Source: Saccostrea cucullata (taxonomy: Eukaryota). Taken from it: a DNA stretch of 64,000 bases. Below the pieces are notes generated by a model that had not been told where the DNA came from, searched no databases, and saw nothing but the letters and a program-made list of their open reading frames with translations. The stretch lies in assembly GCF_032062105.1 (NCBI RefSeq), contig NW_026935066.1:1-64000 (forward strand). The letters run 5' to 3'. A program made the position numbers and the translations under genes. Below are positions 14,046 through 63,320 of this stretch, piece after piece. Each line of letters begins with the position of its first letter. The first letter of the stretch is position 1.

Positions 14046-14899
14046 ATCAGCAAATAAAAGTGCATGCAAAAGCTACACTATTTTCCTTTATACATTCTAC
14101 TCTTTGATGTCAAGGGAAAACATTGATTTAATATTGTGTATTTTTAAAGCTTTGTATCTAAAGCCAGTAAAAACTGAAGAAAAAAAAAGTTGTACATTTA
14201 AGTTTTTTTTAAAGACCAAATACCTTTATAATCCAATCATATACATGTACAACATTTTTTACCATAAAGTAATTGTATATTTTTCTTAAATTCTTACATT
14301 TGCTTTTTTATTTTCATAAATAAGTCATAAATATAAATTAAAAGCAAAAAAGTATTTTTTCGACAATGAATTCGATTTCAATTAAATGTGCATGATAATT
14401 AAATTCAGAAATAAGGCAATAAATGTAACATCCAAAACATCATATGGGGGATCAGGTGCCATGGAAGAGTGAGCATCTCCTGCCGACCGGTCACATTTGC
14501 CGTGTGCTCCTAGTCATAATCGGGAAATAATGTAAAAATCAGTCGTCAATAAGGCATCCACATAATATAGAAACAGTTTGAGATTCTTATTTCCTTCGCC
14601 CCACCTTTAAAAAATTGGATTTTTTTTTGTACTTTATTATATCAGTGCAAGTAAGCTGTCGGCTTTCCAAAAAATTGAATTATTCAATTTACTTACCTTG
14701 TCCTGATATATTTTCAAGTTTTGGGATTATAAAGGTTATGAATGTTTTTACATAAAATTGATTTTCAAAAAATGTTTGAGTTTCTGATTGATGATATCTG
14801 TGTAGTTTTTTGGAGATAAGTTCTTCCACCAATCTGTTTAAACTCTCATGGGCCCCATTTTTAGAAAACCAATTTTTGCATTCATACAATGCAGAATTT

Positions 14900-59994: not shown

Positions 59995-60959
59995 TTATAA
60001 TAACGTCAAAGATATGGACTTTTTCAATTATTTTTGATAACTGTTCATAGACACGCGCTAACTTCCTTTATCATGTTACACTGCCAAGTGAGTACAATAA
60101 TATCTATGTCTAGACCATAATTGATTCAATTTTTAAATTCAAAACAATATACACGATAATTTACAAGCGTCACCAGTATAAAACAGTACACAGCCCAGTC
60201 TGACGGCGCTCGATATATAGCAACGTCATGTATAAGGATAACCTATTTTCATCAAATAACAGTAATTGTCCACTTTTTGAAGTGTCTTTAAGATTTTAAA
60301 AATCGTTGAAAAATCGTATACATCAATTACTAATCAACAGATAAAATATATTCCAATAGTTTCAAGTTGTCTGAATAAATACTTTATGTCTGACGTCGGT
60401 GCAACCGTGTTAAACCACTATGATCGGACGCTGTCCTATTCGGATGGCCGACGTCGCCTTTTCTGTCTATTTTTGAAAAATACTTCTTGCGGTCTTCGCG
60501 TAATATTCTCAGTGTCTACATAATACGCGATAGTAAAGGTACCAGAAAATAATGATAACCACTATATTTGGGATACATTTAATTTTTATTGAGACTCGTT
60601 TTACAAAGAAAATTTTCATTTTAATCACACTTTATTTAAATGTTTATGCCATTTTAACCCTCGTCATAGCGCACAATCGGCGACCATTAATCACTGCGAT
60701 TTTCATAAAAAAAAAATTATTTATGTAAGATTAATTTAAATTGCAAGGCAAATATCAATATTGTGGCAACTGCTATATTTTGAAAATAAAACAATTGCAC
60801 AAATTAAATTATGCATTTTATTTTGGTTATAGAACAAAAATATTTTTATTTCCCTCTTTATTGTTTACCTTTTTTATCAAACATGCATGTAAAAAATATA
60901 CATATAACGATCTACGAGGGTCATTCAAAAAATACGTAGACTATGTTCCACTTCATATT

Positions 60960-62813
60960 CACTGTGTAGAAACGGACTAGGGTAAAGTGCGTTACCCTAG
61001 TCCAAGATGGCGACAAGCAAATACGCTTCGATCATTTTGCACTTACTTTCAGCGTTATACAGACTAGCATTATAAATTTTAATGTTAATATTGAATTGTT
61101 TTGTACAGAAGAACACAACTATTGCAAAAAGTCGGCATGACATGCGATGATTAAAGCCAGATTGTGAATACAAAATTTGAGCATGATTAGGGTAAAGTAA
61201 ATTTTTGACTAGGGTAAAGATATTATGAGCTTTTTTGGTGACTAGGGTAAAGTACGTGTAAAATATCATTTTCCTTGTTTCAGGACTTAAAACATCCTAT
61301 TTCTAGGGATGTTTACTCCTTCTAGACAACTGATCCTACTTCTGTAATTTCCAGGGGTCTGTGTTTTATACCCCGTCCACAGATTTATATTGTTTGTGGT
61401 TTTCAGTGATAGATCACTGTTCGTTATCCTACCTTTTCATTGAGCAGACTCGACACACACTTTGGGCCTTTTCATAAAATCATTGCACAAAACACTATGA
61501 AACGGAAAAATTCTGATTTTAAAATGAATCGAGAGCAATAACGAATTACTACTTCTTGTAGTTAGTTCATGATTCTATTTATAGACATAATAAAACAAAA
61601 TGAGTAGGAAAAGCAACACTCTTTTGATTTAGATGCGGCGAAAATATTTTCAAACATCTACAGATTAATTATTTAAAAATTATAAATAAAGAGAGGGGGG
61701 TATTTTATTTATTTATTGTATTGACGTGTGCATAATGGCCAGAAATAGGGTTTTGTAGTATTCTTACACTGGATCTATGATCGAGAAACGATGCGAAAAA
61801 ATATCATTGCTGTATCTATTGAGGTTACTGGCAAAGCATTTCTTCGAAAGAGAAAATAAATCTATACTTGGGGTTCTGATTCTTAAAATTTCTGTATGTA
61901 AGGTGTTTCTTTAAAGGTGTTTCTTTCACAAGTTGAACACCTGTGAAACGTTTCCGTTTTTGTAAACATGGCACGAACATTTTGTTAATGTTGACGTTTT
62001 ACCGTGTTCAACTCTGTACACATCACTGAGTATAAAAGGACTGATAATAATGGTGAGTTGGTTTTGCTTTCCCACATTTCCCACATTTCTACTCTAATTT
62101 TTCTGGATTACAGTTTAAATATACACTGTAGTTTATTAAAACATTTTTTCACTTCTCATAAGTACATTTATTAAGGACAAAACTTGCTTTGCAAGGATGT
62201 ATCAATTAAACGCATCCCGAAATTTCTAGTTTCAATAATTTTCAGATTTACAGAGTAAGTTTTTAAAATTATACTTCCGTGTGAAATGCTATGGTAACAT
62301 AGGTAAAACTCCAAAGTCCGATGATGACGCCAAATCCGATGGTAATCTGTGCGAAACCCCGATGGTTTGTTGTCGCATATCAGTCATAATATTATGCCGA
62401 AAATATTTGAGAAAACATTAACATAAAATTTGTTTCTATGCACCTTTAAAATTGCATAAAAGTATTTAAAGTAGCTCAAATAAAAGCAATAGTATTAAAT
62501 CTTTAAATAAATTAAGAACTATTCGAATAAAAAGTTCGTTTTGAAGAGGAGCTGAGGTATTGACTTCGACTTCTTAATGACATCACTTTTTTCAATGAAA
62601 CATATGGAGAGAACGAACAGTATTTAAGATCAAAAGTCCATAAAACAATTACAGAATAGGAGTAGAGCAAACACGGACCTTCCAAAAGAAAAATAAGGTA
62701 AGGTTTTTCATTAGTTTTCACCGATATTTATTCATGGTTATTTGAAGCGTAGGAGCTTGTCGTCATCTTGGACTAGGGTAACTCACTTTACCCTTGTCCA
62801 TTTCTACACAGTG
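60960..62813. mobile_element. Non-autonomous TIR element with CACTGTG ends and 5-bp TSD (Transib/RAG-like)
   Basis: 59-bp TIRs (60960-61018, 62755-62813; 4 mismatches) flanked by ATATT on both sides. Confidence 0.8.
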
Positions 62814-62831
62814 ATATTATTATTACAAGAT

Positions 62832-63320
62832 CACCGTATACAACGGGTAACGCGGGGGAGTCGCTAAAAAGTATGGGGGAGTCGTTTTCAACGTATGGGG
62901 GAGTCGATTTTCACCGCTTCGGAGTCAGAAGAGATGTGGGTCACGTCTTTTTTCGGTATATGTAAGATGTCTTTACCAAAAACAAATAGCCCACGGAAGG
63001 TAGCAATAGTTAAGCTTTCTTTTGGTCATTTGTCTGGTTAGCATATACGTCTAGTTTTCTCAAACACTTCGAAACTATTCGACAGATTTCATATTTACGT
63101 TGATCGAATGGTTAAAACATGCATAGTTTGCACAATCTACGACTTGTGTAAGGACTATGACAGTTAAAACAGCAAAAGCAAACGTCAATCTTTCAAATGT
63201 AACAATTCATGCTTGGCCAGACTTTATAAAAAGTATTAATTAAGACATTTTCTCTTCAGACAGTAATGGTTACGTAGGGGGGAGTCGTTTCTGGAAAAAC
63301 ACAACGCATAGGGGAGTCGC
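62832..63320 (+). repeat. GGGGGAGTCG-repeat region, probable transposon end
   Basis: Five copies of (G)GGGGAGTCG near 62854, 62875, 62897, 63278, 63311; no partner end seen in the window. Confidence 0.5.

What the first reader, a model, noticed from the sequence alone, without database searches (positions are those of the whole stretch)
60955..62818. 1.85-kb element with RSS-heptamer-like termini and a 5-bp TSD (Transib/RAG-transposon-like MITE)
Seen: 59-bp TIRs reading CACTGTG inward from both ends (the + strand ends in CACAGTG). ATATT is duplicated exactly; 2-, 3- and 4-bp TSDs do not fit. Each TIR holds a 12-bp hairpin (GGACTAGGGTAA-6-TTACCCTAGTCC on the left) followed by CAAGATGGCG, and GACTAGGGTAAAG-like copies recur at 61186-61255. 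Established: CAC termini plus a 5-bp TSD define Transib/RAG-like transposons, and RAG-like transposons have been reported in bivalves. From recollection, the amphioxus ProtoRAG TIR carries GCCATCTTG, the reverse complement of the motif here. Inference: a non-autonomous family mobilised by a RAG1-like/Transib transposase. No transposase is present in this copy.
Basis: partly seen in the sequence, partly recalled or inferred. Interest (0 to 1): 0.78.

Follow-up and report, generated by a model that had tools for sequence, protein, structure and literature searches.

The report
Old gene-less transposon with RAG-like ends
This is a real but old, gene-less jumping element of a bivalve genome whose ends and 5-base insertion scar look like those of the RAG/Transib transposon group, but the enzyme that moved it could not be found, so the link to RAG stays a resemblance.

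Summary
Window 60960-62813 is a 1,854-bp insertion with about 70-nt terminal inverted repeats (TIRs) that read CACTGTG inward. It is flanked by an exact ATATT duplication.

It belongs to a family of roughly 50-60 copies in this 1.17-Gb genome. [quoted passage not shown] Three uninterrupted paralogues of the host repeat carry ATATT once.

The ProtoRAG TIR element TR5 (GCCATCTTG, a YY1 site) is present exactly in both TIRs, but inverted and 36 bp from the heptamer instead of 27/31.

- No copy, and not the family consensus, encodes anything (no ORF above 81 aa in the consensus).
- The genome's own complete RAGL-B transposon has different TIRs (CACTATCAAACTT...).
- No Transib-like transposase was detected.
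- Bivalve P-like/AcademH-like elements also start with CA(C/T), though the two I measured make 8-bp TSDs.

Earlier notes of this scan tie other CAC/5-bp families of this genome to a P-type enzyme. I could not confirm or exclude that for this family.

Best reading (about 0.5): an old non-autonomous element of the Transib/RAGL/Chapaev clade, with no partner in this assembly.

The parts
60955..60959 (.). Left copy of the 5-bp target site duplication, ATATT
   Evidence: Paralogous empty sites carry ATATT once.
60960..61029 (+). Left terminal inverted repeat. It holds the heptamer CACTGTG (60960-60966), TAGAAAC, the 12-bp palindrome (60974-61003) and the YY1/TR5-like CAAGATGGCG (61003-61012). The first 53 nt are at least 90% conserved across 38 distinct ends.
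61184..61254 (+). Three direct subterminal copies of the motif GA(C/T)TAGGGTAAAG, the same half-site as in the TIR palindrome. They are presumed protein-binding sites.
   Evidence: D2, D4. The same motif triplet is seen in 3' subterminal regions of other copies.
61030..62743 (.). Non-coding interior, about 90% identical to the family consensus. Relative to the 2.9-3.0-kb copies, about 1.1 kb near the 3' end is missing.
62744..62813 (-). Right terminal inverted repeat, 90% complementary to the left one. It ends in CACAGTG. Its palindrome (62770-62799) has one mismatch and its motif reads CAAGATGACG (62761-62770 on the minus strand).
62814..62818 (.). Right copy of the 5-bp target site duplication, ATATT
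60835..60954 (.). Left part of the high-copy host repeat into which the element inserted
   Evidence: (depth table and joints 60949->62814)
62819..63300 (.). Right part of the same high-copy host repeat

Best explanation
Window 60960-62813 is an old, internally deleted copy of a non-coding, non-autonomous cut-and-paste DNA transposon family. The family has about 50-60 copies and a modal length of 2.9-3.0 kb.

I infer that a DDE transposase of the CACTA-Mirage-Chapaev-Transib (CMCT) clade supplied in trans moved it, and that the enzyme belonged to the branch that makes 5-bp staggered cuts (Transib, RAGL or a Chapaev-like relative).

The proposed steps are these:
1. The enzyme recognises the CAC tip and the conserved 53-nt end.
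2. Dimeric DNA-binding domains sit on the inverted GACTAGGGTAA half-sites and on the extra subterminal copies.
3. A host YY1-like zinc-finger protein may bind the CAAGATGGCG site, as YY1 does on the ProtoRAG TIR.
4. The element is excised and integrated at c|AWWWT|g targets, duplicating the 5 central bases.

Shown here: the element, its family, its boundaries, the TSD length, the target preference, the lack of coding capacity, the conserved end architecture, and that it is not a derivative of the resident RAGL-B transposon.

Inferred: the enzyme family, the protein binding at the motifs, and that the autonomous partner is extinct or unassembled.
For: - Termini are CAC...GTG, with a heptamer 6/7 identical to the RSS heptamer CACAGTG and 5/7 to the Transib consensus CACAATG.
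- The TSD is 5 bp in 13 of 20 independent copies, with 3 more at 4/5. Paralogous empty sites confirm it.
- The literature gives CA..TG termini with 2-5-bp TSDs as the CMCT hallmark (PMC12730594) and 5 bp as the Transib/RAG/RAGL hallmark (PMC1131882; PMC7204232).
- The target is palindromic. C stands at -6 in 17/37 ends, A at -5 in 19/37 and T at -1 in 22/37. This recalls the cCASTGg / cCAWTGc targets of Transib-N1/N2_AG.
- There is an exact 9/9 match to ProtoRAG TR5 / the YY1 site in both TIRs. It is conserved in 30 of 38 distinct ends.
- The tip resembles published Chapaev3 TIRs at 10 of 14 positions, for example CACTATGTAACAAAATTT (my count against the TIRs listed).
- The third base is C, not the G of hAT ends.
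Against: - No autonomous copy exists. Every two-ended copy and every unpaired end examined is non-coding or is broken by unrelated nested repeats.
- The PF12940 scan of the genome finds only one RAGL-B element and its decayed paralogue. That element's TIRs, CACTATCAAACTTCC..., share only CACT with this family.
- A survey found one Transib DDE in all molluscs.
- There is no A-rich nonamer at 12 or 23 bp and no A-rich TR2 directly after the heptamer. The TR5-like motif is inverted and at the wrong distance.
- Targets are AT-rich, whereas Transib and RAG prefer GC-rich sites.
- Multiple subterminal half-site repeats are more typical of CACTA, P and hAT elements.
- Unverified notes of this scan assign other CAC/5-bp families of this genome to a P-type enzyme.
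Confidence: 0.5

Rival explanations
1. The family is the passenger of a P/Academ-like transposon lineage (RNase-H fold with the C/DxxH motif) that makes 5-bp TSDs. This is the 'P-type transposon with built-in exonuclease plus a separate zinc-finger gene' that other agents of this scan reported for other CAC/5-bp families in this genome. The transposase's DNA-binding domain would bind the GACTAGGGTAA half-sites. The companion C2H2 protein could bind the YY1-like CAAGATGGCG.
For: - Scan notes s1-700961, s1-718304 and s1-716456 say so. They are AI notes that I did not verify.
- P-like RNase-H genes are abundant here, with 59 PF21787 matches.
- Bivalve P-like/AcademH-like elements do have CA(C/T)AGG...CCT(G/A)TG ends.
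- Subterminal half-site repeats are typical of P and hAT-like elements.
- At least eight first-reader notes list CAC/5-bp elements in a genome that has only one RAGL family.
Against: - The two P-like elements whose ends I could measure make 8-bp, not 5-bp, TSDs. Their TIRs share only CAC with this family.
- No PF21787 hit, and none of the scored YqaJ hits, lies near any of the roughly 90 family termini.
- I could not locate any P-YqaJ fusion. Of the YqaJ genes whose context I examined, the one in this genome belongs to an ISL2EU-like element and several from insects are Mutator-YqaJ fusions.
- The tip CACTG does not fit the P consensus CANRG (recalled from Yuan & Wessler 2011).
Confidence: 0.28
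2. The family is cross-mobilised by the resident RAGL-B (RAG1L/RAG2L) transposon on contig C20275, despite the different TIRs.
For: - A complete RAGL-B element with a 5-bp TSD (ATATA) and a largely open RAG1L frame exists in this genome.
- Both TIR types start with CACT.
- Both carry a GCCAT-type YY1-like motif: GCCATATTT lies 25 bp after the heptamer in the RAGL 5' TIR.
Against: - Beyond CACT the first 16 nt differ (CACTATCAAACTTCC versus CACTGTGTAGAAACGG). The literature says the first 16-17 bp, including the A-rich TR2, are what RAGL-B needs.
- No family TIR motif occurs on the RAGL contig.
- The family is old (median about 89% identity to its consensus) and diverse, while RAGL-B has only two loci here.
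Confidence: 0.07
3. It belongs to another superfamily that can give 5-bp TSDs (hAT5, Ginger2/TDD, KolobokP), or to an undescribed one.
For: hAT5 (5 bp), Ginger2 (4-5 bp) and KolobokP (4-5 bp in some families) are documented. Bivalve genomes hold many poorly described DNA transposon lineages.
Against: - hAT ends always have G at position 3.
- Kolobok ends are RR..YY.
- Ginger ends are TG..CA, as in integrase-type elements (from recollection).
- This family's CAC...GTG ends fit none of these.
Confidence: 0.15

Closest known systems
Non-autonomous Transib elements (e.g. Transib-N1_AG / N2_AG; Kapitonov & Jurka 2005, PMC1131882)
   Same: CAC...GTG termini with an RSS-like heptamer, a 5-bp TSD, a short palindromic target with c before and g/c after the TSD, and no coding capacity.
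   Different: This family has no A-rich nonamer 12/23 bp after the heptamer. Its conserved end is 53 nt long and holds an internal 12-bp palindrome. It has extra subterminal half-site repeats and AT-rich rather than GC-rich targets. No Transib transposase was detected in the genome.
RAGL-B transposons and their non-autonomous derivatives (ProtoRAG of amphioxus; CviRAGL_B of Crassostrea virginica; Pinctada non-autonomous RAGL; PMC7204232, PMC8289069, PMC7481187)
   Same: 5-bp TSD, a CACT start, a bipartite end with a heptamer and a distal conserved block, and the exact ProtoRAG TR5 / YY1 9-mer.
   Different: The 9-mer is inverted and 36 bp (not 27/31) from the heptamer. The tip matches the protostome consensus CACTWMCAAACKT at only 5/13 positions. 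The A-rich block sits at positions 11-13 instead of 8-10. The resident RAGL-B TIRs are clearly different.
Chapaev3 / CACTA (EnSpm) elements of the CMCT clade
   Same: CACTG/CACTA tips followed by an AAAC-type block (10/14 identity to an Anolis Chapaev3 TIR, PMC3014272). Subterminal repeats of a ~12-bp motif occur in direct and inverted orientation, as in En/Spm.
   Different: Those families make 3-bp (TWA) or 2-4-bp TSDs. This family makes 5-bp TSDs, and occasionally 6-bp ones.
P-like / AcademH-like elements of bivalves (PF21787 transposase plus a convergent PIF1-helicase/PHD gene)
   Same: CA(C/T)...(G/A)TG termini, long TIRs, and abundance in bivalves.
   Different: The measured TSD is 8 bp in two elements. 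The TIR sequences are unrelated beyond CAC.

Membership tests
Transib superfamily (sensu stricto) | 5-bp target site duplication | tested here: met
   13 of 20 independent copies are exact, 3 have 4/5 and 2 have 6 bp. Paralogous empty sites agree.
Transib superfamily (sensu stricto) | Termini 5'-CAC...GTG-3' with an RSS-like heptamer (consensus CACAATG) | tested here: met
   The heptamer is CACTGTG: 5/7 to the Transib consensus and 6/7 to the RSS heptamer, with the CAC triplet in nearly all ends.
Transib superfamily (sensu stricto) | A-rich nonamer-like block 23 (or 12) bp after the heptamer | tested here: not met
   Positions 31-39 read CGTTACCCT and positions 20-28 read AGGGTAAAG (against the consensus quoted).
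Transib superfamily (sensu stricto) | Autonomous partner with the same ends that encodes a Transib/RAG1-core transposase | tested here: inconclusive
   No coding copy was found among about 90 termini. PF12940 finds only RAGL-B. The prefilter may miss distant Transibs, and the assembly is fragmented.
RAGL-B transposon derivative | TIR matching the RAGL consensus (heptamer plus A-rich TR2, CACTWMCAAACKT) or the resident RAGL TIR | tested here: not met
   The match to the consensus is 5/13. The resident TIR CACTATCAAACTTCC shares only CACT.
RAGL-B transposon derivative | Distal conserved block (TR5, GCCATCTTG) 27/31 bp from the heptamer, same orientation | tested here: inconclusive
   The exact 9-mer is present and conserved, but it is inverted and 36 bp away. 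It is also the generic YY1 site.
MITE | Miniature size (a few hundred bp) and high copy number | tested here: not met
   This copy is 1,854 bp, the family mode is 2.9-3.0 kb, and there are about 50-60 copies. One 177-bp copy exists (L041).
CACTA/EnSpm, Mirage, Chapaev3 | 2-4-bp TSD (3-bp TWA for Chapaev3) | tested here: not met
   2-, 3- and 4-bp readings fail at the CAC tip in the window and in 13 other copies.
P / Academ-like | 7-10-bp TSD (AcademX 3-4 bp); P-like RNase-H transposase partner | tested here: not met
   The family TSD is 5 bp. The two measured bivalve P-like elements give 8 bp. No PF21787 hit lies near family termini. The reported 5-bp P-YqaJ lineage could not be located.
hAT5 | 5-bp TSD with hAT-type ends (third base G, YARNG) | tested here: not met
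   The TSD length fits, but the third base is C in nearly all ends.

The most novel reading that the evidence does not exclude
The family is a genuine RAG-family (RAGL/Transib-clade) non-autonomous element of a protostome whose ends keep the same YY1-binding 9-mer as the amphioxus ProtoRAG TIR. Recruiting host YY1 to RAG-type transposon ends would then be an ancient feature shared by protostomes and deuterostomes. The element would have been moved by a RAG1-like enzyme lineage distinct from the known oyster RAGL-B.
Probability: 0.12. Interest if true: 0.7.

Novelty: new member of a known kind. Interest (0 to 1): 0.38.

Why it matters
If a RAG1-like enzyme did move this family, it would mark a second RAG-family lineage in oysters that is now lost or hidden. 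It would also extend the ProtoRAG YY1/TR5 end motif to protostomes, which bears on how RSS-like signals evolved.

As it stands, the main value is cautionary and practical:
- In bivalves, 'CAC ends plus a 5-bp duplication' is a good pointer but not proof of RAG/Transib ancestry.
- The family gives a well-defined 53-nt end, half-site motif and target consensus (c|AWWWT|g). These can be used to look for the partner enzyme.

Tried and rejected
1. Long copies as autonomous elements. The 4-12-kb 'pairs' are 3-kb copies plus nested insertions, or two separate copies. No stop-free frame exceeds 130 aa.
2. Consensus rebuilding to recover a decayed ORF. The 2,855-bp majority consensus has no ORF above 81 aa.
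3. tblastn of the resident RAG1L/RAG2L against all copies found nothing.
4. Unpaired ends:
   - The C18287 copy is split inside its TIR by a 5.1-kb foreign repeat.
   - The C23227 copy is cut by a very abundant young repeat.
   - C13662 carries a LINE-like insertion.
   - Five others are ordinary ends.
5. The hairpin as a selected structure. All 14 variant ends break a pair and none is compensated.
6. The P-type lead. I scanned for PF21787 and for YqaJ. One YqaJ locus proved to be ISL2EU-like. Word searches with P-like and YqaJ queries found no P-YqaJ fusion. Mutator-YqaJ fusions of insects showed no clear TIRs. A TTACCCTAGT match upstream of one P-like ORF is not kept in its near-identical second copy and counts as chance.
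7. KolobokP was rejected on its RR..YY ends.
8. Metagenome scans for the tip and for the palindrome gave 0 hits.
9. The large profile-free protein search with RAG1L returned only RAG1/RAG1L-type hits in its top 150. It gave no Transib seeds.
10. Public reads were low-coverage contigs. They were useful only for paralogous empty sites.

Chapaev/CMC-type transposases (for example PF02992, or the RAG1 N-terminal 'Chapa' domain) could therefore not be scanned. The s1-700961 element could not be fetched.
Full report
**Observation**

The window holds a 1,854-bp element at 60960-62813.
- Its arms, 60959-61029 and 62744-62814, are 90% complementary over 71 nt.
- Read inward, both ends start CACTGTG.
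- ATATT stands directly outside both tips (60955-60959 and 62814-62818).
- Each arm contains a 12-bp palindrome, GGACTAGGGTAA-6-TTACCCTAGTCC. It is perfect on the left and has one mismatch on the right. CAAGATGGCG follows it.
- Three more GA(C/T)TAGGGTAAAG copies lie at 61184-61254.
- The 26-nt tip is not expected by chance in the window.

**Family**

In the window's own genome (1.17 Gb, 23,869 contigs) the tip 26-mer, allowing up to 2 mismatches, occurs 77 times against 0 for the reversed control. The inner 21-mer occurs 92 times against 0. BLAST with the 5' and 3' interiors adds a few copies with decayed tips.

That gives roughly 50-60 copies. Some are the same insertion on uncollapsed haplotigs, for example L031 and L036.

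Copies range from 177 bp to 6.6 kb, and the mode is 2.9-3.0 kb. The window copy lacks about 1.1 kb near the 3' end. Part of that missing stretch is another, very abundant ~590-bp repeat nested in the longer copies.

Copies are 68-95% identical to a majority consensus, with a median of 89%. The family is therefore old and has subfamilies.

**Target site duplication and target**

Over 20 independent two-ended copies, 13 have an exact 5-bp TSD, 3 have 4/5, 2 have a 6-bp TSD (ATATCT, AGTATT) and 2 have none.

Three uninterrupted paralogues of the high-copy repeat that hosts the window copy read ...ACTATGTTCC-8 nt-ATATT-ATTATTACAAG, with one ATATT. Public contigs join 60949 to 62814 in the same way. 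This fixes the boundaries and the 5-bp duplication for the window copy.

Across 37 oriented ends, C is enriched at -6 (17/37), A at -5 (19/37) and T at -1 (22/37). The preferred target is thus palindromic, c|AWWWT|g.

**End architecture**

In 38 distinct ends the first 53 nt are at least 90% conserved column by column, and conservation drops after that. The interiors are only about 85-90% alike.

All 14 ends that vary in the palindrome break a pair, and none is compensated. The palindrome therefore looks like two inverted protein-binding half-sites rather than a selected hairpin. The same half-site recurs in both subterminal regions.

**No coding capacity and no autonomous partner**

- Long copies have no ATG/GTG/TTG-initiated ORF of 100 aa or more and no stop-free frame above 130 aa.
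- The 2,855-bp consensus has no ORF above 81 aa.
- The 12-kb 'pair' on C23121 is two separate copies.
- Unpaired ends are ordinary family ends or are interrupted by unrelated nested repeats.
- tblastn with the genome's RAG1L and RAG2L finds nothing in any copy.

**RAG-like genes in this genome**

PF12940 finds one locus, on C20275, plus a decayed paralogue that is present on three haplotigs. The C20275 locus is a complete RAGL-B transposon spanning 1766-9294:
- Its 5' TIR is CACTATCAAACTTCCC and its 3' TIR CACTATCAAACTTCCG. Its TSD is ATATA.
- RAG1L has a RING finger and the catalytic core in an 885-aa open frame, followed by a C-terminal piece in another frame.
- A convergent kelch+PHD RAG2L-like gene follows.
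- Its TIRs are almost identical to the published Crassostrea virginica CviRAGL_B TIRs (supplement of PMC7204232). The host is therefore an oyster-like bivalve.

These TIRs share only CACT with the family studied here. None of the family's motifs occurs on that contig.

**Comparison with the literature**

- ProtoRAG TIRs consist of TR1 (CACTATG), a 27/31-bp spacer and TR5 (GCCATCTTG). TR5 overlaps a YY1 site, CGCCATNTT, that binds YY1 and is needed for efficient recombination (PMC8289069, PMC7481187).
- The family's CAAGATGGC(G) is the exact reverse complement of TR5. It sits at offsets 44-53, so it is inverted and 36 bp from the heptamer. By my estimate, a 9/9 match in either orientation somewhere in a ~60-nt end has a chance of about 5e-4. 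However, YY1 sites are common regulatory motifs, so convergence is plausible.
- The protostome RAGL consensus CACTWMCAAACKT is matched at only 5/13 positions.
- The Transib consensus is CACAATG-23-AAAAAAATC, with GC-rich targets. Here only the heptamer and the TSD fit.
- CA..TG termini with 2-5-bp TSDs define the wider CMCT clade.
- Kapitonov and Koonin place Transib, TransibSU/RAGL, Chapaev and Chapaev3 in one superfamily.
- Anolis Chapaev3 TIRs such as CACTATGTAACAAAATTT resemble the tip studied here at 10/14 positions. They make 3-bp TWA TSDs.
- hAT ends have G at position 3. Kolobok ends are RR..YY.
- A mollusc-wide survey found a single Transib DDE.

**The P-type rival**

Earlier notes of this scan report that other CAC/5-bp families of this genome match elements with a P-type DDE carrying a YqaJ-like exonuclease. 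I tested this only partly.
- The genome has 59 PF21787 matches and more than 500 YqaJ candidates. None lies near a family terminus.
- One YqaJ locus that I fetched is ISL2EU-like: DDE_Tnp_4+THAP next to a SAP-YqaJ-PHD gene.
- The P-like proteins without the GTP-binding domain are widespread in bivalves.
- In three public loci they sit beside a convergent PIF1-helicase/PHD gene. This is the AcademH architecture as I recall it.
- The Tegillarca element has ~560-bp TIRs, ends CACAGG...CCTGTG and an 8-bp TSD. The Pinctada element has ends CATAGG...CCTATG and an 8-bp TSD.

CA(C/T) ends are therefore not diagnostic in bivalves, but these elements do not make 5-bp TSDs and their TIRs are unrelated. 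I found no P-YqaJ fusion. Mutator-YqaJ fusions exist in insects.

**Verdict**

The reading 'non-autonomous element with a Transib/RAG-type signature' is justified as a description. 'Mobilised by a RAG1-like/Transib transposase' remains an inference, which I put at about 0.5.

Direct derivation from the resident RAGL-B, or cross-mobilisation by it, is unlikely. A P/Academ-like 5-bp lineage is the main rival, at about 0.28.

The scan has noted the same kind of signature (CAC ends, 5-bp TSD) before, on other DNA of this genome.

**Limits**

Chapaev/CMC-type transposases could therefore not be scanned, and the other agents' autonomous element could not be compared.

Noticed in passing
L050 (G000:C20275) 1766-9294: A complete RAGL-B transposon. 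Its TIRs are CACTATCAAACTTCC(C/G), nearly identical to published Crassostrea virginica CviRAGL_B TIRs, and its TSD is ATATA. RAG1L sits in an 885-aa open frame (3787-6441), with its C-terminal core piece in another frame (6351-6761), which means a frameshift or a short intron. A convergent kelch+PHD RAG2L-like gene lies at 7230-8572. The 5' TIR has a YY1/TR5-like GCCATATTT 25 bp after the heptamer.
   Followed up: partly
L052, L053, L054 (C6888, C13579, C16554): A decayed RAG1L copy, 82% identical in DNA to the C20275 gene and full of stops. It lies on three contigs that are collinear at about 98% over 10 kb. These are uncollapsed haplotigs, and such redundancy inflates repeat counts in this assembly.
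   Followed up: partly
L035 1990-2580 (nested in the 3-kb copies of the family): A ~590-bp repeat with more than 11,000 first-look candidates in the genome, about 83% identical among the hits. It is a very abundant short element and was not classified.
   Followed up: no
window 60835-60954 and 62819-63300: The element sits inside a high-copy repeat, with very high summed depth in public contigs. At 62868-62910 there are two 21-nt units of the type AAAGTATGGGGGAGTCGTTTT.
   Followed up: partly
L092 (G000:C14853) 3694-7300: An ISL2EU-like pair of genes on one strand: a SAP-YqaJ-PHD protein (637 aa) followed by a THAP + HTH_Tnp_4 + DDE_Tnp_4 transposase (461 aa). The YqaJ scan gave more than 500 first-look candidates in this genome.
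   Followed up: partly
L101 (Tegillarca granosa) 5403-12655; L104 (Pinctada imbricata) 5365-14271; L105: P-like (PF21787, no GTP-binding domain) transposase genes facing a PIF1-helicase/PHD gene, which is an AcademH-like architecture. They have ~430-560-bp perfect TIRs, ends CA(C/T)AGG and 8-bp TSDs. The perfect TIRs suggest young, possibly active elements.
   Followed up: partly
L093/L094 (G000:C18287) 679984-685095: A 5.1-kb insertion splits the TIR palindrome of one family copy. It has inverted ends (CCAGTCAGCAT...ATGCTGAGTGG), and both its sampled ends (about 340 nt and 265 nt) are rich in GGCCCAAC-type repeats.
   Followed up: no
L099 (G000:C23227) 567605-567860: Another family copy is truncated by a young repeat. 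That repeat has more than 700 first-look candidates at 93-95% identity, all starting at the same base.
   Followed up: no
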